A program made the position numbers and the translations under genes. From NCBI RefSeq assembly GCF_006345805.1, contig NC_043001.1, positions 115,568,001-115,632,000 on the forward strand: DNA of 64,000 nucleotides. The letters run 5' to 3'. Positions 3,129 to 64,000 of this stretch are shown piece after piece; position 1 is the first letter of the stretch; the number at the start of each line of letters is the position of its first letter. Source of the stretch: Octopus sinensis (taxonomy: Eukaryota). Below the pieces are notes generated by a model. It searched no databases and was not told the DNA's origin. It saw nothing but the letters and a program-made list of their open reading frames with translations.

Positions 3129-3377
3129 ATCCACCTGATATTACTGCACCAGATAATGTGACATTATTGAGAATCAAGCATCCATTATAGACTGTAATGC
3201 AAAAGGAAACCCTACCCCAGAAGTGTGGTTGGAGAATGAAAATCGAAATTCCTTTCAAATTCAATATTAACTTTTAATATCGTAAAAATATCAGTCGTGT
3301 TTTCTGCTCTGCCATTGCAAAGAGTGAAAAGAATGGAAATTTCCGAGATAGAAAGGAAATTAATATCCTGTTGAAAT
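3129..3377 (+). CDS. Ig-domain exon (frameshifted in this sequence)
   Basis: Acceptor ttttttaattttatag|AT, donor AAAT|gtatgt. With three +1 corrections in T/A runs it reads PPDITAPDNVT(F)IENQASIIDCNAKGNPTPEVWLENE(K)SKFLSNSILTFNIV(K)NISRVFCSAIAKSEKNGNFRDRKEINILLK, an Ig C-x-A-x-GNP-x-P-x-V-W...C pattern. Confidence 0.75.
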
Positions 3378-7862: not shown

Positions 7863-8111
7863 ATCCTCCTCAAGTAAACATTCATATTTCAAATGGGACA
7901 AATAAAATAATAATTAGTTGCACTGCATCTGGTGGAAATCCAGCAAATCATAAATATGAACTGAAGCAAAAATGGGGAAACACCATTAAGAATACTTATG
8001 ATATAAAAGTATTATCTATAAATCCTTCCTTCAGTAATACTGGTACATGGGAGTGTCATGTAAGCAATGATGATTTTCTTGTGATTAAGTCATCAAACTA
8101 CAAAATTCCAG
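7863..8111 (+). CDS. Ig-domain exon, intact, GC-AG donor
   Basis: Acceptor tattttttaag|AT. Open 249 nt: (Y)PPQVNIHISNGTNKIIISCTASGGNPANHKYELKQKWGNTIKNTYDIKVLSINPSFSNTGTWECHVSNDDFLVIKSSNYKIP, with both Ig cysteines. Donor CCAG|gcaagt. Confidence 0.9.
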
Positions 8112-15577: not shown

Positions 15578-15886
15578 TGAGACCTATGTTCAGTTCAGGA
15601 TCAAATTGTCCAAAAAAGAGAAATGTTTCCAATGGAGAAACTGTAATTTTGAAACAGTGTTTTTATTCGCATCCAAAATCTGATGTAAAATGGCAGAAAA
15701 ATGAGGAATCAATTGACTCAAACAAATATTTAATAACTGATTATTTACAAGATGAGTTTCCTTTCAAAGGAAGCTGTACTAGTTTGAAGATAGAAGACAC
15801 CAAAGATGATGTTATAGATACTTATACCTTAACAGTGGAAAACTCCGAAGGAAAAGAAACTGTTGTTTTTATTTTGAGATATAAGA
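15578..15886 (+). CDS. Membrane-proximal Ig (I-set-like) domain exon
   Basis: Acceptor cttattttttccaccag|TG, donor AAGA|gtaagt. (V)RPMFSSGSNCPKKRNVSNGETVILKQCFYSHPKSDVKWQKNEESI...DTYTLTVENSEGKETVVFILRYK. Matches ORF track 15577-15918. Confidence 0.92.
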
Positions 15887-23419: not shown

Positions 23420-23521
23420 AAAAGCAAGAAATACCTATGGAAATAATTATTGGTTGCACTGTCGGAATTGTATTATTATTAATAATAATGGGTCTTACTT
23501 ATATATTCTACAAAAGAGGAG
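23420..23521 (+). CDS. Transmembrane exon
   Basis: Acceptor atcttttcag|AA. (K)KQEIPMEIIIGCTVGIVLLLIIMGLTYIFYKRG is a ~23 aa hydrophobic stretch followed by a basic KR stop-transfer. Phase-1 donor GGAG|gtttgt (alternative TT|gtatgt 4 nt downstream is phase 2). Confidence 0.9.
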
Positions 23522-30405: not shown

Positions 30406-30428
30406 AGTTTGTATCTATCATATTTGTG

Positions 30429-30463
<35 letters not shown>

Positions 30464-30799: not shown

Positions 30800-31080
30800 C
30801 ATGAAGGGGTCTTTCTAACTCTGGTGAGGATGTAGTCAATTTGGCTAGTGTGTCTGCCAGAACGGTAGTGACTGGCAGTTTTCCTGAAGTTAGTATTGAA
30901 AACCATAAGATCATTTGCATCGCAGAACTCCAGCATCCTGGTTCCTTCCTCATTGTTGGAACCAAAACTGTAGCCTCCATGTAAGTCATGGAGGTCCCCC
31001 TGTATGTTGTCCACATGTCCATTGAAGTCACCTGCCACAAATAGAAGGTCCCTATCATTTGTCAACGAGGTAATCTGCAA
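30800..31080 (-). mobile_element. RTE LINE APE-endonuclease fragment
   Basis: FVAGDFNGHV...EEGTRMLEFCDANDLMVFNTNF...QIDYIL. Confidence 0.8.
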
Positions 31081-36246: not shown

Positions 36247-36264
36247 GTTTTAATGCAATAAAGA
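36247..36264 (+). CDS. 18-nt cytoplasmic microexon (G)FNAIK
   Basis: tttttattttttttag|GTTTTAATGCAATAAAGA|gtaagt; phase 1-1, in frame with flanking exons. Confidence 0.7.
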
Positions 36265-37600: not shown

Positions 37601-37929
37601 TTGTGAGGACATGGTGAAAATGCATACAATGCAGAGCCAACTCTTTACTTTTTCAGCCCCAGCAGACTACCATGCCCAATTTGTGGAAGAGCCTTCTGAG
37701 CATGCATCAGACTGAATGGCCACAACCAAACACTGTGATCCATCTTCTAGTCTCACGAGATACCCTTGGTCATTGTCAACAATGGTGGATTAGTTGTATA
37801 TGTATATCATCATCATCATCATCACCATCTCAGTTGTGGTTGAAGATTGGACATCTGGTCATTGGTGTCTGACATTAAAAGAAAAGACAATTTCATTCAC
37901 AATCCTCAGAGGTGTAAATAATCGTATTT

Positions 37930-38531: not shown

Positions 38532-38549
38532 GACTTACATCAGCAAAAG
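38532..38549 (+). CDS. 18-nt cytoplasmic microexon (R)LTSAK
   Basis: Long T-rich tract then aatag|GACTTACATCAGCAAAAG|gtaagt; phase 1-1, in frame. Confidence 0.7.
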
Positions 38550-45904: not shown

Positions 45905-47161
45905 CAGGGGTTGGACAAAATAATGGAAAGACCTTAAAATTTCAAACAAATTTATTTTAATATGGGGTAGGACTGCCTGTAGCAGTAATTACAGCTTGAA
46001 TTCTACAAGGTATGAACTTGTACAAAGTTTGAGTTGTTTCCAAAAGAATTTTTGTCCATTCTTCAGCTAAAAGAGTCCCCAATTCTTGCAGTGATGATGG
46101 TGGAGGATATTGACTCCTTTTCCTGTTTTCCTAAAATGCACCACAAATGTTCAATAATATTGAGATCTGGAGGCTGTGGTGGCAAGATAAGATGTTCAAC
46201 TTCTCTAGAATGTTTCTCATGCCATTCAGTAACAACTTTAGCTGCTCTATGAATTGGTGCATTATCATCCTGAAAGATTGCATTTCCCTTCAGAAACAGT
46301 TCTGCAATCATAGGATGAATTTGATCAGATAAAATGCTTAAATAGTCTGCCATGAAGGGAAATCATTGGGCTGGCAGATTTCCAAGATATAGCCCTCACC
46401 TCCCAGATCATCATAGATCCTCCTCCATGTTTAACAGTTGGAAGAAGGTAGTCTGGGTCAAATGCTTGTTTTGGATGTCTCCACATGTATACTCGGCCAC
46501 TGGTCAGAAATATGGTAAAAGATGACTTGTCCAAGAAAATGATATTCTTCCACTGCTCTAGGGATCAGTTTTGTAGGTTTTACCCCACTCTAAATGCTTT
46601 GCAAAGTTGGTTTTGAAAGTAGTGGTTTTCTGATTGCAGCCCTCCCATGAAATCCAGCTTTGTGAAACTCCCAGCAATCAGTTTTATGGAAACTGGGTTC
46701 TTGAGATGGTTATTAAGCTCTACAGTTATTTTGGGAGCTGTACTTTTGTGATCCTTTCTAACAATTTGCGTAAGAGTCCAACAGTCCTTATCTGAAGGTT
46801 TTGGTTTTCTTCCAGAGTTTTGTTTTGACTAGAAGGTTTTTCCCACTTCCTCAAAGGCTGTTATTACTTTTGAGACAGGACTTCATGATGCACCAAACAC
46901 TTCGGCTGTTTTCATTACGCTAGCGCCTGCTATACGCATACCACAATTTGACCTCTTTGAAAGTCCAATAGATGTGTCATTTTAATGAATTTCAATTAAC
47001 TTTTTCTGTTGATATCTGAAAAGAAACAGCAATTTTAGCAAAACATATTAAGCAACACTAATAATAAATCAAAAAACATAAACATAAACAATCTTTTGAC
47101 GGTTTTATAGATATTTGAAAATTATGATGCTACGTGTTTCCATTCTTTTGTCCAACCCCTC
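45905..47161 (-). mobile_element. Tc1-like DNA transposon (1257 bp), degenerate transposase
   Basis: TIRs caggggttggacaaaa.aatggaaa / tttccattcttttgtccaacccctc flanked by TA. Motifs PTVKHGGGSMMIW, IFQDDNAPIH, PDLNIIEHLW. Confidence 0.9.
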
Positions 47162-48173: not shown

Positions 48174-48215
48174 GTACTGAAGATAATTATGTGACTATTT
48201 CAGATGAAGCTCTCA
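48174..48215 (+). CDS. 42-nt tyrosine-motif exon A1 (G)TEDNYVTISDEAL
   Basis: tcttttcttaaag|GTACTGAAG...GCTCTCA|gtaagt; paralog of 49933-49974. Confidence 0.8.
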
Positions 48216-48406: not shown

Positions 48407-49238
48407 CATCATCATCATCATGGCACCAGGCCCAGTCTGATCTGGCAATGTTTCTAAAGCTGGATGCCCTTCCTAACGCCTACCACTCCATGAGTGTAGT
48501 GGGTGATTTTTACGTGCCACCAGCACAGGTGCCAGACGAGGCTGGCAAACGGCCACAAGTGGATGGTGCTTTTTACGTGCCACCGGCATGGAAGCCAGTC
48601 AGGGTGACGCTGGGAACGGCCACGTTCGGATGGTTCTCTTATGTGCCACTGGCACTGGTATCACAGCTACAATTTCCATTGATGTTGATCGATTTTGATT
48701 TTTGATTTTGATTTTGATTTTGATTTTCACTTGCCTCTACAGGTCTTCACGAGTAAAGTTTTGTGTCCCAAGAAGGAAAGGTATGCATAAGTGGACTGAG
48801 GCCATGGGTTATGGTCTCACTTGTCCTGCCGGGTCTTCTCACGCACCGCATACTTCCAGAGGTCTCGGTCTCTAGTCATTTCCTCAGTGAGACCTAAAAT
48901 TCGAAGGTCATGCTTCACCACCTCATCCCAGGTTTTCCTGGGTCTACCTCTTCCACAGGTTCCCTCAACAGCTAGGGTGTGGCACTTTTTCACACAACTA
49001 TCTTCATCCATTCTCACCTCATAACCATACCAGCGCAAACGTCTCTCTTGCACACCACAACTGATGCTTCTTAGGTCCAACTTTTCTCTCAAGGTACTTA
49101 CACTCTGTTGGGTATAAACACTGACATTACACATCCATCGGAGCATACTGGCTTCATTTCTTGCGAGCTTACGCATATCCTCAGCAGTCACGGCCCATGT
49201 TTCACTGCCATGTAGCATGGCTGTTCGTACACATGCAT

Positions 49239-49243
<5 letters not shown>
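48406..49243 (-). mobile_element. Young 5'-truncated RTE LINE inserted in (TA)n
   Basis: Open minus ORF YDACVRTAMLHGSETW...GRGRPRKTWDE, close to 12700-13640; (CAT)n tail. Confidence 0.93.
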
Positions 49244-49283
<40 letters not shown>

Positions 49284-49287
<4 letters not shown>

Positions 49288-49630
49288 GAGGTGCAATAGC
49301 CCAGTGGTTAGGGCAGCATACTTGCAGTCATGGGATTGCAGTTTCAATTCCCAGATCAGGCTTTATGAGTGTTTATTGAATGAAAACACCTAAAGCTCCA
49401 TTAGGCTCCAGCAGGGGGGGAGGGGCAACCCTGCTGTACTCTTTCAACACAACTTTCTCTCACTCTTACTTCCTGTTTCTGTCACACTGAATCTCCCCGA
49501 GAACTACATTAAGGGTACACATGTCTGTGGAGTGCTCAGCAGCCTCTTGCACGTTAATTTCATGAGCCAGCTGTTCCATTGATCAGATCAGCTGGAACCC
49601 TCGTTGTTGTAACTGACAGAGTACCACCAC
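49284..49630 (+). mobile_element. tRNA-derived SINE (deleted duplicate at 53307-53458)
   Basis: tagcccagtggttagggc A-box-like, gtttcaattccc B-box-like; the copy at 53307 lacks ~190 bp of the interior. Confidence 0.7.
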
Positions 49631-49932: not shown

Positions 49933-49974
49933 GTACTGAAGATAATTATGCAACTATTCCAGATGAAGCTCTCA
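49933..49974 (+). CDS. 42-nt tyrosine-motif exon A2 (S)TEDNYATIPDEAL
   Basis: ccatttcttttcttcaag|GTACTGAAG...GCTCTCA|gtaagt; phase 1-1. Confidence 0.85.
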
Positions 49975-50186: not shown

Positions 50187-50221
<35 letters not shown>

Positions 50222-50271
50222 ATTGAAGAAATGGAGTTGAACGAAGATTGAACAGAAATCGTTTTATTGCA

Positions 50272-50351
50272 TTCTACACGTGTTTCGAAAGGCACAATTT
50301 ACCAAATTCCGATTGAATAATGAGACCATATTGTGTCTTTCTCTTCAGGAA
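50272..50351 (-). ncRNA. Mirror copy of the hammerhead ribozyme in the inverted arm
   Basis: Reverse complement of 52968-53047. Confidence 0.7.
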
Positions 50352-50531
50352 GAAATAGGAAATCCGTTGGAAAAAACAAAAACAGAACAGAGGCGGAGCA
50401 AAACAAATCGAACAAGGCTCCTAAGAGCCCATGGCCAAACTGTTTATCAATGTATGTTGAAAACGGGTGGTGGGTGCGTTGAAGATTTTAACGGGTCAGG
50501 CAGCGGTCATTCCGGTGGGTGAGGGCACGGG

Positions 50532-52292
50532 GTGCCTATGGGTAGTTCGGATAGTGCACAGATAGCCGATTTGGTCGGAATATATATTCTCTACGAATTG
50601 TCCGACCAATTCCCGGAGATCGCGGGCGGCCTGTATCGTGACGATTGTCTGTTTTACCTGCAAAACACCACGAACAGAATAGTGCAGAAAACTAAGAGCA
50701 GGTTAGCTAGGTTTTTTAATAGAATGGGCATGAATATAGTTTTTGATAATGAACTCACCAAGGCTAATTTCCTAGACGTTACACTTAACCTTAATAGCGA
50801 CTCATACTGCCCTTACCATAAGCCTTCCACTAATTTGAAGTATGTCAGTGTCTTCTCCAATCATGCCAAAACCGTAACAGACAATTTGGTTAAAAACATC
50901 TCTCTAAGATTGTCTGGCTTGTCCGCTAGTGCCGATATTTTTATGCAGAAAGCGGAATTTTATAACGCCGCACTATCCAAGGCCGGTTATAGGCAGAAGG
51001 TAATTTATATTGATCCGGCCCTTCCGATGCCATCATTCGGTCATCAGGATAGGGCCGTCTATAATAACATAAACAATTTAAGTAGTGACGGGAGCGCGGC
51101 GGGTGCTGGGGCAGTCGCTCTCGCATTTAATTTAGCGAACAAGGATAATTATCGGTCCGGGGGATCTCACACTAACCCAAAACCCGTTATTCATCCGAGA
51201 ATCACCCACCCGAATGCGAGAGCTGGCGTCCCGACCCACCACATAAATAGGAATAAGCATATATGGTTTGTAATTCCCTTTGGTAAGCAGATTAGAACTA
51301 ACCTCCCCCTCATGTTTCGACAAGCCATCGCCAATAACTTCCCCAGAAATTCCAAATATTACTCCACGGTTAACTCGCATAAAGTTAGGATAGCTTTCTC
51401 CAACACTAAAAACCTCGCCTAGATAATCGCCTCCCATAATAATAGGCTGCTTACTAAGACCCTATCACCTTTTTCCGGAGGCACAGCTTCTTCCGCTCCC
51501 GGTTTAATGCTCAGTAGGAATAATAATAGTAGCAATAATGATATGAGAGCCAGTACAGTGACTCATAATCTCAGCTCCAACCAGGGATTATATGCTAGGG
51601 GTATAGTTATAAATAAGGGTGTTGTCATTGACGGTAGCAATGGCAGTAGTGAGGTGAGCGCAGCTCGGCTCGTTAGGGTAGAGAGTCCCAATAGCAACTC
51701 CAGCATCGTTTCCGGCAATAGCAGCACCACGGGCACTAGCAATGACAGCACTCTGATTGATAGTGTAGAATCAGGGGTTATTCCGTTAGTTAATAGTGAC
51801 GTAGTGGAAAATAAAGTAGTAAGCGGCTGCAGTTCTCGCAACAAATATAGTGACAGTAACACAGTTCTAATTTCAGAAACTAATCCTAACAGAATAAGGT
51901 TCACGTCGGTGAACTCCAAGATCAGAAACGCCGTCTACCAATGCAAGGTTTACACGGACTCAGATGTCTACGCTTATGTCGGGGCCTCATCGTCAAGATT
52001 GGCCTTACGAATCTCCAACCATTACGCAACTTTTCGAGACGTGAATAAACGCCAGACCACGGGACTTAGCAAGCTAATATGGCGATTGAAGAATACGAAC
52101 TCAAGCTACAGGCTGGAATGGTCAATTTTGTCGGTGGCCCTCCCATTTGACAGGGGCAGAAGGAAGTGCAACCTTTGTGTCTCCGAACTCTTCCATATAT
52201 TGTTCGCCAGAGACCGGATGGTAAACGGACTTTTACAGTCGGCTTTTCGATGCCCCCATTGGCGGCGTTATACTTATCTTGCTTATAAATAA
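50532..52292 (+). pseudogene. Penelope-like RT (from PMGS motif) + GIY-YIG endonuclease, one in-frame stop at 51420-51422
   Basis: PMGSSDS, GLYRDDC, FLDV, YHKP, SNHAK; then AVYQCKV..YVGAS..RISNH..LSKLIWRLK..WSIL..CNLC..E. ORFs 50532-51422 and 51507-52292 share a frame. Confidence 0.9.
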
Positions 52293-52967
52293 CGCTTATA
52301 AATAATACCTGCACCCGGTTACACTACTTATATGAAAATAGCCCTTGGTAATAAAGTCTGAAAAAGCTTTTAAGAGAAATATGATTAACCATTGCAAGGG
52401 GAATTACTCCTGGGAGACGAATGGTGTTTTGTTTTTGACGACGGGGGGTTTCTTTGACAAGGCATGATTAGACGAACACACGCACACATAAAATATTTTT
52501 CTGCCGCCCGACGGATTTTACAGCAGTGACCATTGTGTAGAGCTGTTTACCAACTGACGGCCGCGCGATCAAACGCACACACGTACACATAAAATATTTT
52601 CTACCCCCTGACGGATTTCTCCGCAGTGACCAGAGTGTAGCGCTTCTTACCAACTTGCGGCCGCACATATATAGAACAGTACACACACACATGTTTCTAA
52701 GTAGATTTTGTCTCGCCCCATATAATACACCTAATATTCTTTAAATAGTCAGAACTTTAGTCTCGGTCACAAAGAACATCTACGCACCCCGTGCCCTCAC
52801 CCACCGGAATGACCGCTGCCTGACCCGTTAAAATCTTCAACGCACCCACCACCCGTTTTCAACATACATTGATAAACAGTTTGGCCATGGGCTCTTAGGA
52901 GCCTTGTTCGATTTGTTTTGCTCCGCCTCTGTTCTGTTTTTGTTTTTTCCAACGGATTTCCTATTTC

Positions 52968-53047
52968 TTCCTGAAGAGAAAGACACAATATGGTCTCATT
53001 ATTCAATCGGAATTTGGTAAATTGTGCCTTTCGAAACACGTGTAGAA
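52968..53047 (+). ncRNA. Minimal type I hammerhead ribozyme in PLE pseudo-LTR
   Basis: Stem I TTC/GAA; core CTGAAGA (52971-52977); stem II GAAAGACACAAT/ATTGTGCCTTTC (11 of 12 pairs); GAAA (53033-53036); stem III AC-ACGT-GT with palindromic loop; cleavage triplet GTA (53042-53044). Confidence 0.75.
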
Positions 53048-53258
53048 TGCAATAAAACGATTTCTGTTCAATCTTCGTTCAACTCCATTTCTTCAATTCA
53101 CTAATAATATTAAAATTCAATTATCCGCACCAACGCACGGTTGCAACACCATATGGTTGTACCTCCAACCGTGCTGTCTTCTGCTGTGATTTTTGCTACC
53201 AAGGTATCGGTTAAACTTTTGATTAATCTGCAACAAGATTATTCATCTTTCTATTTCA

Positions 53259-53709: not shown

Positions 53710-54150
53710 CATTGGGCTGAGGAATAATTCATAGGTCTTTTCTTCACATTTAACAATGTGCACGGAAATAAAATACATTGGCAAAACGTTTTATGTTATT
53801 TGAGAGAAATTTCTGCTCAACAAGATGAATTTTGATTTTTTAAATTTTATTGATTTTTGTGCATTTTCAGATCATTAAAATGCACTTTCAAGAGGAAAAA
53901 AACTTAGCATTTTCCACACCATTTGCTTTTTCATTTAATCAATTTGTTAATCCTGCCAAAGCTGCTTTTGAGATTTGTCCTGTGTATTGAGAAGGAGCAA
54001 TTTCTCAAACTACTACCCACCATTGGTTTTTGAGCTTCAAAAATGGGAATTTTGACCTCAAGGATGGATTACACAGCAGTCAACCAATTCAGTTCAATGA
54101 AGAGTGATTGAATCATCTTCATCACAAAAATTCACATAAATATGAACTTA
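53710..54150 (+). mobile_element. Mariner 5' fragment (N-terminal HTH)
   Basis: AKAAFEICPVY*EGAISQTTTHHWFLSFKNGNFDLKD...PIQFNEE, homologous to the 9610-10853 transposase. Confidence 0.7.
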
Positions 54151-54183
54151 CTGTGCTTTGAAACACATCTTATATATATATAT

Positions 54184-54236
<53 letters not shown>

Positions 54237-55744
54237 CTTTATTTAAAGCAGCAGAATATTCAACAAAATCTGTTACTCATTGGAGGCATCTACATCATTT
54301 TGACAGCCTCCAGAGAAGCATACATACACATGCGCACACACACACACACACACACACATATACATATATATATACACACACACACATTCGTGCTGTATAC
54401 TTGACCTCCACTCTCATATCTTCTTCCATTCTGTATTTATAGTGATGATACTTCAGAATCAGGGATGCTGGTGTGTAAGGTTGTAAGAGTTTGGGAGAAA
54501 AGGAGGTGAATACAAACCATGGAATGAAACAGGTCAAATGAACATAGGAGTTTTAATAAATCATGAACAGGGAAAGGATTTACGTATAGAAGGGGACACA
54601 GTAAGAAAAAGGAATAGATGCTGACTGGAAATAGTACAAAGGAAAGGAAGTGGCAACTCACAGTACAGAGATGGCAATATGTATGGTATAAATGTATGGT
54701 GTATTCTATTTTTGTCTCTTACAGCAGCAGCATAGCACTTTCGACAGGAGAATGATGGAGGGCTCATTATAGGGTCATGAGTTGTGGGGCTGGCAGTTGT
54801 GATTAGTGGGGAAATTAAGAAAGGGATACCAATTTGAAGGGTGGAGGATCATTTGTGGTAGGAACATGGAATGGATGTCTGTTGGAAGTGGCAGCAGATG
54901 TAAGATGTGGTGAGTAGTGGAAAAAGGGAAAATCAATAACAACAGTGGAGGTTAGCTCATTGATGGTAAGGATAAAGGAAAAATGTCAATAGGAGGTGAA
55001 CCATACTTAGGAGTGGTTTTTAATGGCAGGAAGAGGAAATGTGAAGAAGAGAAAGATGCAGTTTAGAAGAGCTGATTTAGTTCGGTTTCTTGGGGTAGCA
55101 TGTGTGAAAACATTGTTGCATATAAAATATACACTATCTATATAATAATTTGCTTCTTTCTTCACCTGTTATACTTTAGTTTGATAGAGAGGTGGAAATG
55201 GAATGAGTGAGAGGTTGAGTAAGAATGAGAGAAAGAGGGAGAAATGTGGGTAGAGAAGCAAGAAGAAGAGAGGAGTATAATAATACACTAAGGTCAAATG
55301 CATCACGTAGTTAGTTGAAGGGGGAGGCAAAGAGCAAGACACAAATACGATGAGAGGAAAGTGGGAGAGAGAGAGAAGTGTTAATGACATACTGTAGGGT
55401 GGAAAGAGAAAGAGGGAAATGTTAAAGACATGAAGATGGGAATTACATGGTTAAAATGTTTGTTGAAGAGGTAGAGAGAAAGAGAGAAATATAAGGTGCT
55501 TAGCAGAAGGAAATTTCAAAATCATATACTATTTTGCAACTGGAAGTGAAATCACTTAGCAAAATACAAATAACAATCATCCTTTCTTTCTTAAATAGCT
55601 TTGCTTAATCTCTTTCGTTCTGTGGAATTTCCACAGATCTCACTAGTATTTTATTTTTTTTAGTTACTTTTTGTACAATATCAAAATATTAAAACTATCC
55701 TCTCCAAACAATAAATGTGCACATCTTTCTATAATTTTTTGAAG

Positions 55745-55804
55745 CTAATGAAGAGCAATATGCTGAAGCTAGTGGGCCCAGTTATTTAGAATTGAAACCA
55801 GCAG
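55745..55804 (+). CDS. 60-nt tyrosine-motif exon B1 (T)NEEQYAEASGPSYLELKPA
   Basis: ataattttttgaag|CTAATGAAG...CCAGCAG|gtaagt; phase 1-1. Confidence 0.85.
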
Positions 55805-56024
55805 GTAAGTATAAACAATATTGTTAGTACACAGCATGATCTTAGAAATTATCTTAAACATTAACAGAAAGCTAACAGTCATGAAATGTATCATTCTCTA
55901 ACTTTTATCTATTAATATGTGTGTATGAGTGTGTTTGAGTCTGTCTCATTAGCATTTATTATTGTAGTATCAACACAATACTAACATAACGCTATTTATT
56001 GTTTTTATTTCTAATTTTTTAAAG

Positions 56025-56066
56025 ACATGAAGATTTCTTACGTTAATGTTTCAAGGAAACCTGATG
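56025..56066 (+). CDS. 42-nt tyrosine-motif exon C1 (D)MKISYVNVSRKPD
   Basis: ctaattttttaaag|ACATGAAG...CCTGATG|gtaagt; phase 1-1. ISYVNV fits the ITIM consensus. Confidence 0.85.
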
Positions 56067-56162
56067 GTAAGTATATAAGCAATCGAATAATAAAATTTCA
56101 TTCATTAGAGCAAGAGTTAGCACAATTTTGGTTCACTCTTTCTTTGAGTAGTATAGGCAGCT

Positions 56163-56525
56163 TAATGCATGTCTTTCATTTGTTCCAGTCATTGGACTGC
56201 AGCCATGCTAAGGCACCACTTTCAAGGGTTCAGTCCAACAAATCCACCCGAGTACTTATTATTTTTAAGCCTTTTACTTATTCTATTGGTTTCTTTTGCT
56301 AAACTGCTAAGTTCTGTGGATGTGAACAAACCAACACAAGTGTCAAGTGGTGATGGGATCAAACGCAAAGGCACACACACTCCCTTATATATATACCAAA
56401 TCCATTCACAAGATTTTGGTCAGCCCAGGATTATAGCAGAATACACTCGCCCAATGTGCCTCATCATATGACGAAACCCAGACCCATTTGTTTGGAAATT
56501 AAACTTCTTACCTCACAGCCACACC
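56163..56525 (-). mobile_element. tRNA-derived SINE, in copy 1 of the duplication only
   Basis: Reverse complement begins aggtgtggctgtgaggtaagaag. The 3' tail resembles the CR1/L2-group LINE tail. Confidence 0.75.
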
Positions 56526-57533
56526 TAAAAACCTTTCAAAATATTAAAATTCCATTGCATATACGATAAACTTCTTACAGATATTCCTATTTAACTCTGA
56601 TATTTTACCTTTTTATCAATCCTTACCCTTAATGATGTAGTTCATAAAAATTTATTTTGTAAGCTTAATTTGTACAAAAAAATCCAAATAATTAAGTAAT
56701 AATGAATTCAGTAGATATTTGCCAAGGCATGAGACACAATGAATGGGAATAAATTTGCAATAGTAAATGTGATTAACTGTTCTCCTCCAGTATCCAAAAT
56801 CACTCCTGTTTATTTATAACTCTAGCAAGAAATTTATCTTAGAAAAACCCTTATTGCTCTAAACATATTTGTGAATAGCTTCCCTTAATGTTAATATCAG
56901 AACCAAATATTGAATTGATGGAAATAGTACATACTGTACTAAATATTGACAATTAAATTAGTGTTAGTACATTCTGAGATTATATCCTAGAGAAGTACAC
57001 TTTGTACAATCAGCCTCTCAATAAGTTCTACTTTTACAAAATCATTAGCACACTCAGCATCCAAACTCTATCTACTAATCCCTACAGAACACTGAAGAGA
57101 TGGAGGATATTGTGGCCTCTTGGCAGAAACGGCCGTAAGGAACTGATATTTTATGTTTTACTTGTATATATTTGTGTAGCACACAGTCTTTGAATGTGTA
57201 TGTATTTTTATAATACTCCCTTTTGTTTTGGAATAGATAGACTTAATAGAATGCCTACTGGCTGATCTATGTAATTTTTGTATCCCCTCCATTTTCTTTT
57301 TGCCGGATATATATATATCATTCCCCATGATAGATCGCTAGCCACTGAACCTTTCTCTATTTTCTCTCCCTCTTTTTATATTCGTCCCTGTTTATTTCTG
57401 TGTTCCTTTCTGTCAAAGAGCGTCGGCTTGAAACATAAAAGACTTTCTCACTTCCCGAGCGTTAAACTAATACATCTGTTTGTTGTTTACACACCCATCC
57501 TCGTCTTTTGTTTTGTTTTGTTTTTGTAAATTC

Positions 57534-57586
<53 letters not shown>

Positions 57587-57719
57587 GAGTGGAAAATTTA
57601 CAGGTAAGTGTGTTAAATAATAAGGCAATAAAAGAGAATGACTCTCCCCAGACACCACAAAATATGCTTCAACACACAAACTCATATAAAGAATTTTGCA
57701 AACCAAATACAAAAATGAA

Positions 57720-58052
57720 GAATAGAAATGGCTTTTCTGATAATTTTTCCACTTCAATAATTAGATGTTTATAAGTTTACAAACAGGTAACACCTGAATT
57801 CAGTTAGTCAACTAAAGCATGGGTGAGGGCAGTTGTTGAGGCCATTGCTTCTGCTTTCCTTTTTTCTTGAAGGTCCTTCCACAGCAACAGGCCAGTAAAG
57901 AACTTTAGAAAAGGAAAGCAGAAGCGATGGCCTCAGCAACTGCCCTCACCCATGCTTTGGGTAACTATTTGAATTCAAGAGTTACCTTTTTCTAAACTTA
58001 TAAACACCTAATTATTAAAGTGGAAAATTATCAGAAAAGCCATTTCTATTCA
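57720..58052. mobile_element. Palindromic foldback/MITE (~150-bp arms, ~35-bp loop); right-truncated second copy at 59443-59725
   Basis: gaatagaaatggcttttctgataatttttccact ... agtggaaaattatcagaaaagccattttctattc; inner gcatgggtgagggcagttg / caactgccctcacccatgc. Confidence 0.85.
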
Positions 58053-58197
58053 GTTTTTCAGATATCTAATACTGTACCAAGGGCTTTCTATTTCTTTTTC
58101 TACTATCTACATATAGCTGCTACTTTCTGTGTATCATCAAAATATTTAAATCACACCCTCCAAACAATAAATATGCCTTTCATTTTATTTCTTGATG

Positions 58198-58257
58198 CTG
58201 TGGAAGAACAATGTGCTGAGGTTAGCGAGCCGAAATATTTAGAAATGGGACAACGAA
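58198..58257 (+). CDS. 60-nt exon B2 (A)VEEQCAEVSEPKYLEMGQR; paralogous acceptor mutated (possible pseudo-exon, or shifted acceptor at 58207)
   Basis: Aligns to B1 and keeps donor CGAA|gtaagt, but the acceptor reads gatg|CT instead of gaag|CT. An in-frame AG at 58205-58206 would give a 51-nt exon. Confidence 0.6.
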
Positions 58258-58492
58258 GTAAGTACAATCAATATTGCATGATCTTAGAACCTATCTTTAA
58301 AATAGACAGACAGCTAACTATTATGAAATATGTCACTCTCTAACTTTTGTGTATTTAATATGCATGTATGTATGTGTGAGTGTGTTTGAGTGTATCTCAT
58401 GAGTATTTATTATGGTAGAATCAGTACACAGCTATCTTAATTTAAATATTATTTATAGCCATGCTATTTGTTCTTTTTTTCATTTCTTAAAG

Positions 58493-58534
58493 ACACGGAT
58501 GGTACTTACGTTAAAGTTTCAAAGAAACCTGCTG
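58493..58534 (+). CDS. 42-nt tyrosine-motif exon C2 (N/D)TDGTYVKVSKKPA
   Basis: catttcttaaag|ACACGGAT...CCTGCTG|gtaagt; paralog of C1. Confidence 0.85.
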
Positions 58535-60131
58535 GTAAGTATATAAGCAATTTATTAACAAAAAATTACATTCATTAGAGTAAGATTAGCAAATATCTCA
58601 TTCTTTCTTTGAGTAGAATATGCAGCTTAATATATATGTATGATTGAAATTAAAACTTTGAAAATGTTAAAATTTCATTGCATATGCAATGAACTTCTTG
58701 CAAACATTCATATGTAACTTATATTTTACACCTTTATTTATCTTACTTTTATTAATGCAGTTCATATGCATATATTTTTAAAGTTTTATTTAAACAAATA
58801 ACCCAAATTGGTATACAATTAATATTGAATTCAGTAGATACTTGCCTAGACATGAGACACAAAAATGGAACAGATTTCAAAAGGTAAATGGGATCAGCTT
58901 TTCCCCTTCAGTATCCAAAATAACTCCTGCTTATGGATAACTCTAACAAGAATGTAATCTCAGAAAAACCCTTATTGCTCTAAACATATTTGTGAATGGC
59001 TTCTCTTAATGGTAATATCACCACCAAATATTGAAGTGAGGGAAAAAGTACAAACTGTACTAAATATTGACAGAATTAAATTTAGTGTTAGTACATTCTG
59101 AGATTATATCCCAGTGAAGTAAATTTTGTACATTCAGCCTCTCAATAAGTACTACTTTTACATAATCATTAACACTTTTCTTGTAGAATAGAATTTTGGG
59201 TGCCACTTTACTAAGGAACCCTCTTTCCAAAGTCTAATTTTGAAATGGCATATTAACCAAAATTACTCTTTGTTTACTCTTGTTCATACCAAATAGATTT
59301 ATTAGACAATACTTTTCTTTTATGCAATATGTAAATGAGAGGATGAAGAACATATTCAGTACATGGACTTCGCCTGGATTTAAATATTTTTTGTTTCTAA
59401 ATACATATATGTGTATATATATAATTATATTTGAAGAAAAAAGAATAGAAATGGCTTTTCTGATAATTTTTCCACTTCAATAATTAGATGTTTATAAGTT
59501 TACAAACAGGTAACTCCTGAATTCAGTTAGTCAAACAAGACATGGGTGAGGGCAGTTGTTGAGGCCATTGCTTCTGCCTTCCTTTTTTCTTGAAGGTCCT
59601 TCCACAGCAACAGGCCAGTAAAGAACTTTAGAAAAGGAAAGCAGAAGCGATGGCCTCAGCAACTGCCCTCACCCATGCCTTGGTTGACTATCTGAATTCA
59701 AGAGTTACCTTTTTCTAAACTTATCCACATCAGATCTTGTTTGTTTCATTCATAAAATCTGCATCTCTTAAAAGGAAGTCAAATATCTGAAAATCGGTTA
59801 TATTGATGTAGTTTTACATGCTTATTCCTGTGAAGCCATGTACTTATGGAGAAAAAATTTGATGAAAACTCGAAAAAACTGTGTATTTTTAGCCAATAGT
59901 GAGACAGAAATTTTCTGTGATGTAGCATTCTCAACTTAGTGGTGTCAACTTTAAGGTTTTACCCTGTGAAATTTATAGTTTAGCATCTGTGAAATGACCT
60001 GTTCATTGTAGGTTTCTAAATAAACAGAAATACCTAATGAAGTCAACATCTATCATCTTACTGTTTCTTTTCTCTCTTCATTGATTTCTGTATGTTTTGT
60101 ATATTTTTATTTTTATTTGTTATATTAATAT

Positions 60132-61640
60132 AAGTGAATAATTCCGGGTAGAAGTAGGGGTCCACCAAGGTTCAGCCCCCAGTCCCTTTTATTCATCATA
60201 GTCCTCCAAGCAATAACAGAGGAATTCAAGACGGGTTGCCCCTGGGAGTTCCTCTATACTGATGACCTGGCCCTCATAGCAGAATCACTACCGGAACTAG
60301 AAAAGAAATTTTGGGTGTGGAAGTTAGGTTTAGAATCAAAAGGCCTTATAGTAAATGTAGCGAAGACCAAAGTTATTTAAGTAGGAAGGTGAACTCATCA
60401 CACACACCCTTAAGTAGGTGGCCCCGCTCAATCTGTAGAAAAGGTGTAGGTAGAAACTCTTTAAGATGTACCCAATGTAAGCTATGGACGCATAAGAGGT
60501 GTAGCAACATCAGAGGAAAACTAACTGAGAAGATAGCTTTCATGTGCAGCAGATGCACAGGGGCAATAGACACCACAGATGCTCAGAAAACAGATTCCAT
60601 CACACTCCAGGGGGAGAAATTAGAAGTAGTTGATTGTTTCCACTACCTAGGTGACCAAGTTAGTAGTGTGGGTGGATGCTCAGAGAGTGTCACCACTAGA
60701 ATACGAATAGCCTGGGCAAAGTTTAGAAAGTTTCTACCCCTACTGGTGACAAAGGGTCTCTCGCTCAGAGTGAAAGGTAGATTGTATGACACATGTGTGT
60801 GAACTGCCATGCTTCAAGGTAGTGAAATATGAACTGTGACAGCAGAGGACATGTGTAGGCTTGAAAGAAATGAAGCTAGTATTATCCGCTGGATGTGTAA
60901 TGTCAGTGTGCACAGACGACAGAGTGTAAGTGCTCTGAGAGAAATGCTGGACACAAGAAGCATCAGATGTGGCATGCAAGAAAGATGTTTGCGCTGGTAT
61001 GGTCATGTACTATGGATGGATGAGGAGAGATGAGTGAAGAAGTGCCACTCCCAAACAGTTGAAGGAATCCAGGGTAGAAGTAGACCCAGGAATACATGGG
61101 ATGAGGTGGTCAAGCATGACCTTTGAACATTGGGCCTCACAGAGGCAATGACGAAATACTGAGAACTCTGGAGGTATGCTGTGACTGCGAAGACCTGACA
61201 GATAACGTGAGTTCATGGCTGTTTCCTGCACCAGCTTCACATAGCAGCCCCAACCCATCCAAAGTACCTTCGACTGCAGGACGGCCTGCTGTGCTTACCT
61301 TGGATTGTAGGGTGACCTGCTGTGCTTAAGGAGACCTACTGAGTCAAATACATCAACATCAAAATAAAAATCAAATGGAAATTGTAGTTGTGATACCTGT
61401 GCCTGTGGCACATAAAAAGCACCATCCGAACATGGCCGATGCCAGCGCCACCTTGACTGGGTTCTGTACCGGTGGCATGTAAAAAGAACCCACTACACTC
61501 ACGGAGTGGTTGGCTTTAGGAAGGGCATCCAGCTGTAGAAACACTGCCAGATCAGACTGGAGCCTGGCGTAGCCTCCTGGCTTCCCAGACCCTGGTCGAA
61601 CTGTCCAACCCCGTGCTAGCATCGTTAAATGATGATGATG
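60132..61640 (+). mobile_element. 5'-truncated RTE LINE
   Basis: GVHQGS..FLYTDD, RWPRSICRKGVGRNSLRCTQCKLWTHKRC, YLGD; RTE 3' UTR and (GAT)n tail. Confidence 0.9.
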
Positions 61641-61669
61641 TATGTATGTATGCGTTTGTTTCACATTAG

Positions 61670-61725
61670 TTGTTACAGTTGTACTTTATGAAGCCATTGA
61701 TTTCTACACACAGGAATCAATATAG
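61670..61725 (+). CDS. Probable terminal coding exon (V)VTVVLYEAIDFYTQESI*
   Basis: Acceptor gtttgtttcacattag|TT at 61670 (or in-frame gttacag|TT at 61679), phase 1, ending in TAG 61723-61725. VLYEAI fits the ITIM consensus, in keeping with the upstream Tyr exons. Confidence 0.65.
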
Positions 61726-61838
61726 GTTGCTTATTTCAGTATTATGTATACCTGTTATGTATTTGTGTACATCACCAATATATATGTGCATGTGGATGTA
61801 TGTATTCATATATAAGTTTATATGTACATTAATGCATT

Positions 61839-61885
<47 letters not shown>

Positions 61886-63084
61886 AATGGGGGTGTCTGT
61901 CTCCAAAACTCTAAGTTTGAGTAATGTTTTCATGCTTGGATTTGGAAACTACAATAAGAATAATCAATCCAATAGACTTTCTAAATTCAGCAGAGTTTAT
62001 TTCTATTCACTTATCTTTATAGACCCAAGTTCCTTCAGCATTTGTCCATATTTGGATTTCCAGATTTGGCTTCATGAATAATATAAATGATGAAAGAGCT
62101 GAATCTAAAATCTAGTTGCAAAAAGGGAAGGTCCAAGCTGTTCATGTAAACATTGTTGGGTGGAGTTCTTCTTGTGCCCTTTCAATAGTGTTCTTCCTGA
62201 GTCCTTTCAGTTTCAGACTTATCCTTCAAATAATGTTCTACATGCATCATCGAAGGATTTGAAGAATCATTTTGTTCTCATCATATCCAATTCTGAACAG
62301 GCAATATTGGCATGATCACTTTCATTATCATCTTCAGGAAAAGAAGATTCATCACAAATAATTTTTTCCCATTCTTTATGGAAGCTGGATAACAATTGTG
62401 AAATCTCTTCAAGGCTTAGCTTTTGATTCTTTGATATTTCGTGGAAGGATTACAAAGGACAAATGAATAGTTGGCAGGCTGTCAATGTTTTATACTTGTT
62501 GAATTATGATGCAATACTAATTGTTTGTTTCATAAAAATGATGCACTAAATAGTAGTATTGCATCATCTTCAGATGTCTTAGTAAATGCTGTTAGAGATC
62601 TTTGCCCCAGTATGGGATGAGGTTGTGCAAACTGATCTCAAAATGCTGAGCCTTACAGAAGAGATGACAATGGATTGGGAGGGTTGGTGCCCTGCCATGC
62701 TCAAGAAGACCTGCCCATAGCAAGCAGAACACCTACCCAAAACCTGGTCACAGTATCTCAACGTGCTGTGTGCACTGAGGATACAACTTTTTTGTAACCC
62801 CGTAGTCCTGTATCATATTCTGTCGAGTTTTTGCTAGAAGACTATGAAAATCAATGTTTTTTTTTTCTATTTGCTCAAAAAAGTTCACTCATGACTAACT
62901 TTGAAATTTTTATATTTGGTTGCATTTGGGTGGGTTTCCAAAAACTAGAACCCTGATAGAATAATAAACAATAAAGGAAAAAAAGATCCATAACTGTTAA
63001 AAGAATTATATTCTACATTCCAGACCAATAAAAAGAAGGTAAGTCATATAAAGTCAAATTAGTCAATAGTCAAGTTGCGGCAAG

Positions 63085-64000
63085 TCTAATAGAGAGAATG
63101 AAACTCAATGGCAGGTTAGCTTTGTTCTTGCATGTGGTGTGTAGTTCTTGCATGACTTTAATTGCTCACTCATAGCATTAATTGCTTCTGCTGATCTTTA
63201 ATTTTGAGGGCTCTTGTTTCCAGTGATTTGTCAAGCATATCAAAGAAGTCTTGTAGAGTAGTAAGGTTTGTGATAGCTCTGCATAATCTTCAGCTCTATA
63301 CACTTGGTCACTGAACCAGTGGTCTGCCCAGTCATATGAGATGACTAGCAGACCATCTGCAATCTCTCACATGTGACGTAAGTAAAAATATAAGAAGGGC
63401 TAGGATTGTTTGCAAATTCCATCTGGCATTACTGATGTTTGGAATTTTCTGAAACTTGATGAAAGGGATGTCTCTCTTTCCATGGAAGAACTTGAAGGCA
63501 TGGGTTAAGTGAAACAGAAACTTCATATCTCTCTCAACCAGCTTGATCTACTATGACGATTTCCATTCTGGAAGGAGCCTTGGAGTTCTTCATACCTTGT
63601 CATGAGTTCTTTGACAAGAAAATATCCGATGTTGAGTGAATTGCTTGCACTAGCTAGCTCCTCATCCATAAAATATGCAGGATTCTGTCCAAGACATGGT
63701 GTTTGTTGCTCATGAATTGTGGCTCATCATAGCATTTGTTCAAGAAATTCTCTGCAGTCTAACCACTACCCAACTCTTTCATCCGGTATTCACACTCGTC
63801 GTATCAGCAATAATCATTTAGTGAAATTCATCCAAGATGCTTTTCAATCCTTCTGCAATGCTTCTCGACCTTGTCACCACACAGCTTCAGAGCAGCCAGC
63901 TTAATTTCACTTGTTTTGTCTTGATGAATTACCACTTGATATTCATTTCCGTCAATATGTTTACCATCAAAATGCAGGTCCCATTTCTGATTGCCTAGTG
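63085..64000 (-). mobile_element. Degenerate DDE transposase (hAT-related, family uncertain), runs off window end
   Basis: Minus frames: WDLHFDGKH, IIADTTSVNTG, KHHVLDRIL, NISNARWN, RSN*CYE*AIKVMQE. Confidence 0.6.

What the first reader, a model, noticed from the sequence alone, without database searches (positions are those of the whole stretch)
55745..58534. Duplicated exon pair assembles ITAM-like motifs across a splice junction, with SH2 specificity switched between copies
Seen: B1+C1 gives YLEL-KPADMKIS-YVNV and B2+C2 gives YLEM-GQRNTDGT-YVKV. Both are Yxx(L/M)-x8-YxxV, the spacing of an ITAM (YxxL/I-x6-8-YxxL/I). The substitutions hit motif positions: L to M creates YxxM (PI3K type), N to K removes the Grb2 +2 Asn, and the first Tyr becomes Cys (TAT to TGT, YAEA to CAEV). 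Inference: functional diversification of duplicated signalling modules.
Basis: partly seen in the sequence, partly recalled or inferred. Interest (0 to 1): 0.7.

Follow-up and report, generated by a model that had tools for sequence, protein, structure and literature searches.

The report
Octopus receptor tail built from duplicated mini-exons
The flagged region is the tail-coding end of an uncharacterised, octopus-only immunoglobulin-type surface receptor gene, where tandemly duplicated mini-exons each add one tyrosine docking motif; the "ITAM-like" spacing is real but follows from fixed exon sizes, and the motifs are not canonical ITAMs.

Summary
The window is Octopus sinensis chromosome CM016863.1. 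An NCBI model on this same sequence (LOC115212247) contains KYLEMGQRNTDGTYVKVSKKPA. One caveat: B2 is preceded by TG, not AG.

The exons belong to an IgSF type-I receptor (Ig exons, TM exon, then phase-1 mini-exons A, B, C), split by NCBI into two loci. The family was found only in Octopus. Paralogues carry 2 to about 20 B/C modules, one module per exon.

Across the family:
- B consensus is Y-L-x-M (M 17, L 7 of 27).
- C consensus is D-x-x-Y-V-N-V (Asn 28 of 32), a Grb2-type motif.
- 0 of 20 B+C junctions fit the canonical ITAM.
- Module order also includes B-B and C-C.
- One isoform skips C1, and O. bimaculoides lacks C1.

"Specificity switching" is weakly supported. M is the family norm. N to K is one base, private to this copy. 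Y to C sits at a poorly conserved position shared with unit 3. The exons are no more conserved than the introns.

Verdict: a new member of a known kind, a multi-site phosphotyrosine docking tail evolving by exon duplication and gene conversion. Interest is modest.

The parts
3129..3377 (+). Ig-domain exon remnant with at least three frameshifts (pseudo-exon, or skipped)
   Evidence: tblastn with paralogues P0002, P0010 and P0021 hits two or three frames; three-frame translation
7863..8111 (+). Intact Ig-domain exon (249 nt, phase 1-1; GC donor)
   Evidence: 72% identical to P0010 residues 577-662; boundaries read
15578..15886 (+). Membrane-proximal I-set Ig exon (309 nt, phase 1-1)
   Evidence: Identical to O. 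sinensis LOC118763568 (P0001); Pfam I-set
23420..23521 (+). Transmembrane exon (KQEIPMEIIIGCTVGIVLLLIIMGLTYIFYKRG)
   Evidence: tblastn with P0001 and P0019; AG/GT boundaries
36247..36264 (+). Juxtamembrane mini-exon 1 (18 nt; 1 nt shorter than on the sister scaffold)
37659..37715 (+). Alternative terminal exon used by NCBI model LOC118763568 (short-tail form)
   Evidence: tblastn with P0001, stop codon read
38532..38549 (+). Mini-exon 2 (18 nt; 1 nt longer than on the sister scaffold, which restores the frame)
48174..48215 (+). A1 mini-exon (42 nt): TEDNYVTISDEAL
49933..49974 (+). A2 mini-exon (42 nt): TEDNYATIPDEAL; with A1 it gives YVTI-x10-YATI
55665..57052 (+). Duplication unit 1 (contains B1 and C1, plus a repeat insertion at about 56170-56530)
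   Evidence: self-BLAST and the repeat finder
55745..55804 (+). B1 exon (60 nt): NEEQYAEASGPSYLELKPA
   Evidence: 59-60 of 60 nt identical in O. vulgaris and O. bimaculoides
56025..56066 (+). C1 exon (42 nt): DMKISYVNVSRKPD; skipped in isoform X3; absent from O. bimaculoides
57711..58051 (.). MITE-like hairpin element just upstream of unit 2
   Evidence: inverted arms 57745-57863 / 57909-58027, 89% complementary; second copy at 59434-59731
58104..59175 (+). Duplication unit 2 (contains B2 and C2)
58115..58116 (+). Strong upstream AG acceptor; using it would give an in-frame B2 extended by 27 aa
   Evidence: sequence and translation; the same extension appears in O. vulgaris models P0012 and P0014
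58198..58257 (+). B2 exon (60 nt): VEEQCAEVSEPKYLEMGQR; preceded by TG, not AG; the NCBI model starts it at 58195; an in-frame AG lies 9 nt inside
58493..58534 (+). C2 exon (42 nt): NTDGTYVKVSKKPA; Lys codon AAA where the sister scaffold has AAC (Asn)
59434..59731 (.). Second copy of the MITE-like hairpin (95-96% identical to the first)

Best explanation
55745-58534 is part of the 3' end of one gene, an Octopus-restricted single-pass immunoglobulin-superfamily receptor. NCBI has split this gene into LOC118763568 (Ig, TM) and LOC115212247 (tail).

Its cytoplasmic tail is encoded by symmetrical phase-1 mini-exons of three types, used in series:
- A (42 nt): acidic, YxxI.
- B (60 nt): EEQ-Y/x-AE..P.-Y-L-x-M/L.
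- C (42 nt): D-x-x-Y-V-N-V-S-K-K-P.

Each exon contributes one short linear phosphotyrosine motif. The tail therefore most likely works as a multivalent docking scaffold after phosphorylation by a Src-type kinase. On this reading, C modules would recruit a Grb2/Drk-type adaptor (pYxN). B modules would recruit a p85-type or other SH2 protein (pYxxM/L). The A pair may bind a Syk/Shark-type tandem SH2.

The 2.4-kb B-C units multiply and homogenise by tandem duplication, unequal exchange and gene conversion, so module number differs between paralogues (2 to about 20).

The x8 spacing across the B|C junction is a by-product of fixed exon lengths, not an ITAM signature. The differences between copy 1 and copy 2 have three sources:
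- family-wide module variation (L/M);
- conversion from unit 3 (Y to C, and the TG acceptor);
- one private base change (N to K).

Shown here: the anatomy, the family, the motif statistics, the splice-site states and the divergence figures. Inferred: phosphorylation, the SH2 partners and the scaffold role.
For: **Identity of the sequence**
- The window is 100% identical to O. sinensis CM016863.1.

**One gene**
- The Ig, TM, mini-exon, A1, A2, B1, C1, B2 and C2 exons splice conceptually into one open frame.
- Models in paralogues and orthologues join Ig, TM and B/C modules in single proteins: P0019, P0010, P0011, P0015.

**Family distribution**
- HMMER against 1.84 billion representative proteins finds the tail only in Octopus proteins, all unnamed.

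**One module per exon**
- In paralogue LOC115212119 the B modules are 60-nt exons and the C modules 42-nt exons with the same splice contexts.

**Motif statistics**
- B second Tyr: 24 of 27. Its +3 residue is M in 17 and L in 7.
- C Tyr: 29 of 32. +2 Asn: 28 of 32. -3 Asp: 28 of 32.
- The linker is 0 of 8 identical between copies, while the motif cores are kept.

**Serial use with cassette skipping**
- Isoforms X1-X3 and P0022.

**Concerted evolution**
- The B2 exon is 100% identical to the unit-3 B exon of the sister scaffold, and the TG|CT acceptor variant is shared with unit-3 copies.
- Unit 2 against unit 3 on this chromosome is 94.6% identical. Unit 3 against its counterpart on the sister scaffold is 91%.

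**Established knowledge**
- pYxN binds Grb2-type SH2 domains, with pYVNV of Shc as a classic site. pYxxM binds p85 SH2 domains.
Against: - No transcript reads could be inspected, so splicing rests on automated NCBI models.
- No spliced transcript-derived protein for these exons turned up in the 5.8-billion-protein collection.
- B2 lacks an AG acceptor here. The equivalent exon has a dead donor in O. vulgaris.
- Exons of unit 2 are no better conserved than the introns.
- One upstream Ig exon is frameshifted. This particular gene copy, or its copy-2 modules, could therefore be decaying.
- SH2 partners are inferred from vertebrate and fly specificity rules. They have not been tested in any cephalopod.
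Confidence: 0.72

Rival explanations
1. Each B+C pair is a functional ITAM-like unit: two tyrosines read together by a tandem-SH2 kinase of the Syk/Shark type. The copies have been functionally diversified to recruit different SH2 proteins.
For: - The spacer is exactly 8 in all 21 B-to-C junctions seen in the family.
- Both tyrosines are highly conserved.
- No indel was seen in any of 11 B copies, and only one (a 1-nt deletion in L001 C3) among 12 C copies.
- Paralogue dN/dS is 1.1-1.5, compatible with diversification.
- Non-canonical invertebrate ITAMs exist: Draper, read by Shark (PMC8092387).
Against: - 0 of 20 junction peptides have L/I at both +3 positions.
- C carries the Grb2-type +2 Asn, and B is mostly YxxM.
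- The same x8 arises for B-B.
- Modules are shuffled (B-B 8, C-C 11).
- C1 is skipped in isoform X3 and is missing in O. bimaculoides.
- N to K is private to this copy, and M is the family norm.
- B2 splice sites are damaged in two of three close genomes or haplotypes.
Confidence: 0.08
2. Copy 2 (B2, and perhaps C2) in this chromosome copy is a decaying pseudo-exon pair with little or no function. Its differences from copy 1 are neutral drift plus gene conversion.
For: - The AG acceptor is lost in the window.
- The same TG|CT state is found in unit-3 B exons, which the LOC115229375 models skip.
- The donor is lost in O. vulgaris B2, and the O. vulgaris model skips it.
- Exon divergence is equal to or greater than intron divergence.
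- YVKV is unique among 32 C modules.
- A frameshifted Ig exon lies upstream.
Against: - NCBI model P0022 on this sequence includes B2, C2 and B3.
- The reading frames of all copies are open.
- Orthologue dN/dS is 0.23-0.41.
- Tyr and Asn are conserved.
- A compensating -1/+1 indel pair keeps the tail in frame with the TM exon in this copy.
- In-frame rescue acceptors exist: an AG 9 nt inside B2, and a strong AG 81 nt upstream.
Confidence: 0.17
3. The two copies are mutually exclusive alternative exon pairs, so that one or the other signalling module is chosen per transcript.
For: The exons are symmetrical (phase 1-1) and homologous, which is the usual precondition.
Against: Every available model uses them in series (B1-C1-B2-C2-...). 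Paralogues string up to about 20 modules in one protein.
Confidence: 0.03

Closest known systems
Canonical ITAM (CD3 zeta, FcR gamma, Ig alpha/beta, DAP12; Draper in Drosophila)
   Same: Two tyrosine motifs in a receptor tail with a fixed short spacer (8). The motif pair is split by an intron. Acidic residues lie upstream.
   Different: The +3 residues are M or V rather than L/I. The second motif is a YxN site. The pairing is not obligatory (B-B and C-C orders, exon skipping). No evidence of tandem-SH2 binding.
Multi-site Grb2 docking scaffolds (LAT-type transmembrane adaptors; the Shc pYVNV site)
   Same: Repeated Y-V-N-V motifs with a conserved +2 Asn in a disordered tail. Several copies per protein.
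   Different: Here the scaffold is the tail of a multi-Ig receptor, not a short-ectodomain adaptor. There is no sequence homology. Binding is untested.
pYxxM PI3K-p85 docking sites (CD19, CD28 YMNM, Gab/IRS/DOS scaffolds)
   Same: The B-module consensus is Y-L-x-M, repeated many times.
   Different: There is no homology beyond the four-residue motif, and a minority of modules have L.
Vertebrate multi-Ig immunoregulatory receptors with tails encoded by several short exons (FCRL family; PECAM-1)
   Same: A variable number of Ig domains. A cytoplasmic region encoded by one to five or more small exons carrying ITIM/ITSM/ITAM-like tyrosines (PMC2413239). A clustered, rapidly diversifying gene family with alternative splicing of tail exons.
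   Different: No detectable sequence relationship. The octopus tails are built from tandem repeats of just two or three exon types, up to about 20 modules, far more repetitive than FCRL or PECAM tails.
TG-AG tandem 3' splice sites (Szafranski et al. 2007, PMC2374985)
   Same: The annotated acceptors of B2 and B3 on this chromosome are TG, with an AG a few bases away.
   Different: In humans, TG sites were only ever alternatives to a nearby AG, never the sole site. Whether TG is really used here is unverified.

Membership tests
ITAM | Two YxxL/I motifs (L or I at both +3 positions) | tested here: not met
   B1C1 is YLEL...YVNV and B2C2 is YLEM...YVKV. 0 of 20 distinct family B+C junctions match.
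ITAM | Spacer of 6-8 residues between the two motifs | tested here: met
   Exactly 8 in both pairs and in all 21 B-to-C junctions. It is fixed by the exon lengths of 60 and 42 nt.
ITAM | Located in the cytoplasmic tail of a transmembrane receptor or adaptor | tested here: met
   Open conceptual splice from the TM exon through C2. Paralogue models join Ig, TM and modules.
ITAM | Both phosphotyrosines bound together by a Syk-family tandem SH2 | not testable with these tools
   Needs binding assays with octopus Syk/Shark.
ITAM | The two half-motifs always occur together | tested here: not met
   Module orders are BC 21, CB 15, CC 11, BB 8. Isoform X3 skips C1. O. bimaculoides has B1 without C1.
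Grb2-type SH2 site (pYxN) | Asn at +2 after the tyrosine | tested here: met
   28 of 32 family C modules, including C1 (YVNV). NOT met by this window's C2 (YVKV), the only Lys seen.
PI3K p85 SH2 site (pYxxM) | Met at +3 after the tyrosine | tested here: met
   B2 is YLEM. 17 of 27 family B modules have M. B1 (YLEL) does not.
ITIM | (S/I/V/L)-x-Y-x-x-(I/V/L) | tested here: inconclusive
   C1 (ISYVNV) fits. C2 (GTYVKV) and most family C modules do not: the -2 residue is G in 16 and D in 8 of 32.
Immunoglobulin superfamily receptor | Ig-fold ectodomain detected by profile | tested here: met
   Pfam I-set, Ig_3 and Ig_2 hit the window's exons and P0001, P0002 and P0010.
Tandem exon duplication | Homology extends through the flanking introns; exons are symmetrical and of equal length | tested here: met
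   Units align over about 1.1 kb at 73-91% identity. B is 60 nt and C 42 nt, all phase 1-1.

The most novel reading that the evidence does not exclude
Octopus has evolved a lineage-specific, clustered family of multi-Ig receptors. Their signalling valency would be tuned by adding, deleting, converting and alternatively splicing interchangeable mini-exons, each encoding one phosphotyrosine docking motif (YxN, YxxM/L, acidic YxxI). Tails run from 2 to about 20 modules, and some modules are entered through non-canonical TG acceptors. This would be an independent invention of immunoreceptor-style combinatorial tyrosine signalling in a cephalopod, with haplotype-level variation in module content.
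Probability: 0.3. Interest if true: 0.55.

Novelty: new member of a known kind. Interest (0 to 1): 0.3.

Why it matters
Cephalopod immune and cell-recognition receptors are almost unstudied. This gene belongs to an unnamed, Octopus-only cluster of IgSF receptors whose tails look like purpose-built tyrosine-docking arrays.

If the modules are phosphorylated and read by SH2 adaptors, the family would show how immunoreceptor-type signalling tails can be assembled and resized by exon duplication outside vertebrates. It would also give candidate receptors for octopus haemocyte or neural recognition.

For the specific claim made, an ITAM with switched SH2 specificity, the evidence is weak, so the practical value is mainly correct annotation:
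- two NCBI loci should be merged into one gene;
- B2 and B3 have unusual TG acceptors;
- the more ITAM-like pair lies in the A exons upstream.

Tried and rejected
1. **More copies in the window.** tblastn of the B and C peptides against the whole window found no copies beyond the two pairs.
2. **Known domain in the tail.** Pfam found nothing on the tail proteins.
3. **Transcript-derived spliced proteins.** Two searches of the 5.8-billion-protein collection returned only automated genome models, so there is no independent evidence of expression.
4. **Locus of the 1220-aa paralogue P0010.** The gene range was too long and no DNA was returned. I used LOC115212119 instead.
5. **Unit 2 in O. vulgaris.** My first reading of the megablast result was that O. 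vulgaris lacks unit 2. This was wrong: pattern searches found B2 (dead donor) and C2 there.
6. **The B2 acceptor.** My first inference was that loss of the B2 AG means B2 is unspliced in this allele. I softened this after finding NCBI model P0022, which includes B2 via a TG acceptor, and two in-frame rescue AGs.
7. **Mutually exclusive splicing.** Rejected, because all models use the pairs in series.
8. **Literature.** A search for octopus ITAM or IgSF receptor work found nothing relevant.
9. **dN/dS.** Counts are tiny (33 codons) and give mixed signals: 1.1-1.5 between paralogues and 0.23-0.41 between orthologues, with dS oddly above the intron divergence. I treat them as weak evidence.
10. 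**Transposon-like ORFs at 50532-52292.** Pfam found no family.
Full report
**What is in the sequence.** The window is eukaryotic. It is 100% identical over 42 kb to Octopus sinensis chromosome CM016863.1 (assembly GCA_006345805.1), so it starts at about 115,568,001.
- B1, 55745-55804 (60 nt).
- C1, 56025-56066 (42 nt).
- B2, 58198-58257 (60 nt).
- C2, 58493-58534 (42 nt).

All four are phase 1-1. Joined, they read NEEQYAEASGPSYLELKPA|DMKISYVNVSRKPD and VEEQCAEVSEPKYLEMGQR|NTDGTYVKVSKKPA. The motif strings, the 8-residue spacers and the three substitutions are therefore correct.

The exons sit in a genuine tandem duplication. 55665-57052 matches 58104-59175 with E-values of 1e-84 to 1e-144, and the copies are interrupted by repeat insertions. 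No further copies lie in the window. A third unit follows just outside it, at window-equivalent 67742.

**One correction to the observation.** B1, C1 and C2 have AG...GTAAGT boundaries. B2 is preceded by TG (cttgatg|CT).
- The 96%-identical sister scaffold VCDQ01000858.1 (L001) has cttgaag|TT at the same place. So do both B2-type exons of O. bimaculoides and the B2 of O. vulgaris.
- The TG|CT variant is otherwise found in unit-3 B exons: L001, O. vulgaris, and this chromosome's own B3.
- NCBI's model on this very sequence, LOC115212247 (P0022), reads MKISYVNVSRKPD-DAVEEQCAEVSEPKYLEMGQR-NTDGTYVKVSKKPA-AVEEQ...-STDGTYVNASNKPA-GYQ. It enters B2 at 58195 and B3 at the ancestral position, both after TG.
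- In humans, TG acceptors are documented only as alternatives to a nearby AG (PMC2374985).
- Here an in-frame AG lies 9 nt inside B2. A strong AG with a long pyrimidine tract lies 81 nt upstream (58115-58116) and would add 27 in-frame residues.
- I could not see the evidence behind the NCBI model, so the 5' edge of B2 is unverified. Its donor and the B2|C2 junction are canonical.

**The gene.** Homology searches identify the following on the + strand:
- a frameshifted Ig exon remnant (about 3129-3377);
- an intact Ig exon (7863-8111);
- an I-set Ig exon (15578-15886);
- a transmembrane exon (23420-23521);
- two 18-nt mini-exons (36247-36264 and 38532-38549);
- two 42-nt A exons, 48174-48215 (TEDNYVTISDEAL) and 49933-49974 (TEDNYATIPDEAL);
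- then B1, C1, B2 and C2.

Spliced conceptually, everything from the intact Ig exon through C2 is one open frame. NCBI has split the gene in two. LOC118763568 covers Ig, TM, mini-exon 1 and an alternative terminal exon at 37659-37715. LOC115212247 covers the tail from a Met inside C1. On the sister scaffold the tail is LOC115229375, with isoforms X1-X3. Models in paralogues and orthologues (P0019, P0010, P0011, P0015) join Ig, TM and B/C modules in single proteins. Relative to the sister scaffold, mini-exon 1 is one base shorter and mini-exon 2 one base longer. This compensating pair keeps the tail in frame.

**The family.** An exhaustive HMMER search of 1.84 billion representative proteins with the tail found convincing relatives only in O. 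sinensis, O. vulgaris and O. bimaculoides. All are 'uncharacterized', and several lie on the same chromosome.
- The longest, LOC115212116 (P0010, 1220 aa), has an N-terminal hydrophobic leader (read from the sequence, no signal-peptide predictor run), a long ectodomain with several Pfam Ig-family matches, a TM segment and about 20 alternating B and C modules.
- In paralogue LOC115212119, B modules are again 60-nt exons and C modules 42-nt exons with the same splice contexts. 'One module, one exon' is a family rule.
- Pfam recognises only the Ig domains. The tail matches no known family.

**Is it an ITAM?** I collected 27 distinct B and 30-32 distinct C modules.
- **B modules.** The second tyrosine is kept in 24 of 27. 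Its +3 residue is M in 17 and L in 7. The first tyrosine (QYAEA) is Y in only 16 of 27 (otherwise D, H, C, N or S).
- **C modules.** Tyr is kept in 29 of 32, +2 Asn in 28 of 32, and -3 Asp in 28 of 32. The +3 residue is V in 18, I in 7 and L in 1.
- **What the motifs are.** C is thus a D-x-x-Y-V-N-V module. YxN is the Grb2-type SH2 consensus, and pYVNV of Shc is a classic Grb2 site (established knowledge). B is a Y-L-x-M/L module, and YxxM is the p85 SH2 consensus.
- **Spacer.** It is 8 in all 21 B-to-C junctions, because the exon lengths never vary. B followed by B gives the same x8 (YLEL-KPAVVGEQ-YAEA in O. bimaculoides).
- **Module order.** It is not fixed: BC 21, CB 15, CC 11, BB 8. Isoform X3 skips C1. 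O. bimaculoides has no C1 behind B1.

The spacing is real and conserved, but it follows from the exon architecture. The residues argue for independent SH2 docking sites rather than a bipartite ITAM.

**Were specificities 'switched'?**
- **L/M.** M is the family consensus, so B1's YLEL is the variant state. YLEM is present in every B2/B3 copy of all three species.
- **N to K.** This is AAC to AAA, in this chromosome copy only. The sister scaffold, O. vulgaris and O. bimaculoides have Asn. Lys is unique among 32 C modules.
- **Y to C.** O. bimaculoides B2 and O. vulgaris B2 keep Tyr, while B3 has Cys in all three species. The O. sinensis B2 exon is identical to B3 (60 of 60 nt against L001 B3). 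Cys therefore most likely reached B2 by gene conversion from unit 3. In the window's copy the tract also carried the TG|CT acceptor.
- **Concerted evolution.** Unit 2 against unit 3 on this chromosome is 94.6% identical. Unit 3 against its counterpart on L001 is 91%. L001 unit 3 against O. vulgaris unit 3 is 98.7%.

**Selection.**
- Between copies 1 and 2, the B exon is 68% identical and the C exon 79%. The flanking and intervening non-coding sequence is 76-85% identical.
- Pooled, exon differences are 27.5% against 20.4% non-coding (Fisher p = 0.14; B alone p = 0.06).
- Against O. bimaculoides, unit-2 exons differ at 10-12% and non-coding sequence at 7-9% (not significant).
- Nei-Gojobori counts give dN/dS of 1.1-1.5 between paralogues and 0.23-0.41 between orthologues. 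They rest on 33 codons and are probably disturbed by conversion.
- B1 is nearly invariant: 59-60 of 60 nt across three species.
- B2's splice competence varies: intact on L001, TG acceptor in the window, dead donor (ATAAGT) in O. vulgaris, whose model skips it.
- What is conserved is the motif cores. The linker is 0 of 8 identical between copies. This is the usual pattern for short linear motifs in a disordered tail.

**Best explanation.** The region encodes part of a modular phosphotyrosine docking tail of an Octopus-specific IgSF receptor. Modules are added, lost and homogenised by tandem duplication, unequal exchange and gene conversion, and are used in series with some cassette skipping.
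- The likely mechanism is inferred, not shown. Receptor engagement would lead to Src-type phosphorylation. C modules would then recruit a Grb2/Drk-type adaptor and B modules a p85-type or other SH2 protein, with valency set by module number.
- The closest analogies are LAT-like multi-YxN scaffolds and vertebrate FCRL/PECAM-type receptors, whose tails are encoded by several small exons bearing ITIM/ITAM-like tyrosines (PMC2413239).
- Draper/Shark shows that invertebrates do use ITAM-type signalling (PMC8092387), so a Syk-type reader cannot be excluded.
- The better candidate for a Syk-type reader is the A1+A2 pair upstream. It gives YVTI-x10-YATI with acidic residues before each Tyr. On the sister scaffold the sequence is YATISDEALSAENNYATI, and it is present in isoform X1 but halved in X2.

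**Verdict.** The ITAM and 'switched specificity' interpretation is only partly supported. This is a new, unnamed member of a known kind of system, of modest interest, with some unusual details worth a transcript-level check.

Noticed in passing
window 48174-48215 and 49933-49974: The duplicated A mini-exons give YVTI-x10-YATI, with acidic residues before each Tyr. This has canonical ITAM residues (YxxI twice) but a 10-residue spacer. On the sister scaffold, isoform X1 has both A exons and X2 only one, so splicing could toggle a double or a single motif.
   Followed up: partly
window 36247-36264 and 38532-38549: Relative to the sister scaffold (L001), mini-exon 1 has lost one base and mini-exon 2 has gained one. 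The 11 residues between them differ (FNAIKRLTSAK against VKRNKETSSAK) but the downstream tail stays in frame. This is a compensated frameshift.
   Followed up: partly
window 15578-37715 and 56027-64000 (continuing beyond the window): NCBI annotates two separate loci, LOC118763568 (Ig, TM, short tail) and LOC115212247 (tail from a Met inside C1). These are almost certainly one gene. The A1, A2 and B1 exons are in neither model.
   Followed up: yes
window 3129-3377: An Ig-domain exon homologous to paralogues' exons carries at least three frameshifts, so it is a pseudo-exon. This receptor copy has lost at least one Ig domain or is partly decaying.
   Followed up: partly
window 7863-8111: This intact Ig exon ends with a GC donor (CCAG|gcaagt) rather than GT.
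   Followed up: no
window 54145-54272, against L001 31188-62701: The sister scaffold carries about 31 kb that is absent from the window. It includes a tail mini-exon encoding AARANAISSKPN that the window lacks. This is a large structural difference between the two copies (allelic haplotig or recent paralogue, undecided).
   Followed up: partly
window 57711-58051 and 59434-59731: Two copies (95-96% identical) of a roughly 300-340-bp hairpin element with about 119-nt inverted arms, MITE-like. One sits directly upstream of the B2 unit.
   Followed up: partly
window 56170-56530 and 27269-27420 (- strand): A repeat insertion inside duplication unit 1, downstream of C1, is absent from unit 2 and has a related copy elsewhere in the window. 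It is probably a SINE-like element.
   Followed up: no
window 50209-53110: A 2.9-kb element bounded by 330-nt inverted repeats that are 99% complementary. It holds two ORFs (296 and 261 aa) with no Pfam match. It looks like a recent mobile-element insertion in the intron between A2 and B1.
   Followed up: partly
L001 76319-76365 (unit-3 C exon of the sister scaffold): A 1-nt deletion in C3 shifts the frame, so the terminal exon reads ...NLLVTNEGLCSTDEQKEPRSFQN instead of the ancestral ...KKPxGYQ*. The alternative frame is 85-90% conserved in O. bimaculoides and on the chromosome.
   Followed up: partly
L004 11950-12009 (O. vulgaris B2): The O. vulgaris B2 exon keeps the first Tyr (QYAEV), but its donor is ATAAGT and its 3' end reads KQP(H), as in other paralogues. 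This suggests conversion from another family member plus loss of the exon.
   Followed up: partly
window 8451-13313, 28312-31080, 46063-46353, 48817-49347, 60311-60802: Numerous fragments of reverse-transcriptase and transposase ORFs (LINE-like and mariner-like) fill the introns. There are also long TA and CA microsatellites, for example at 57535-57583 and 54180-54390.
   Followed up: no
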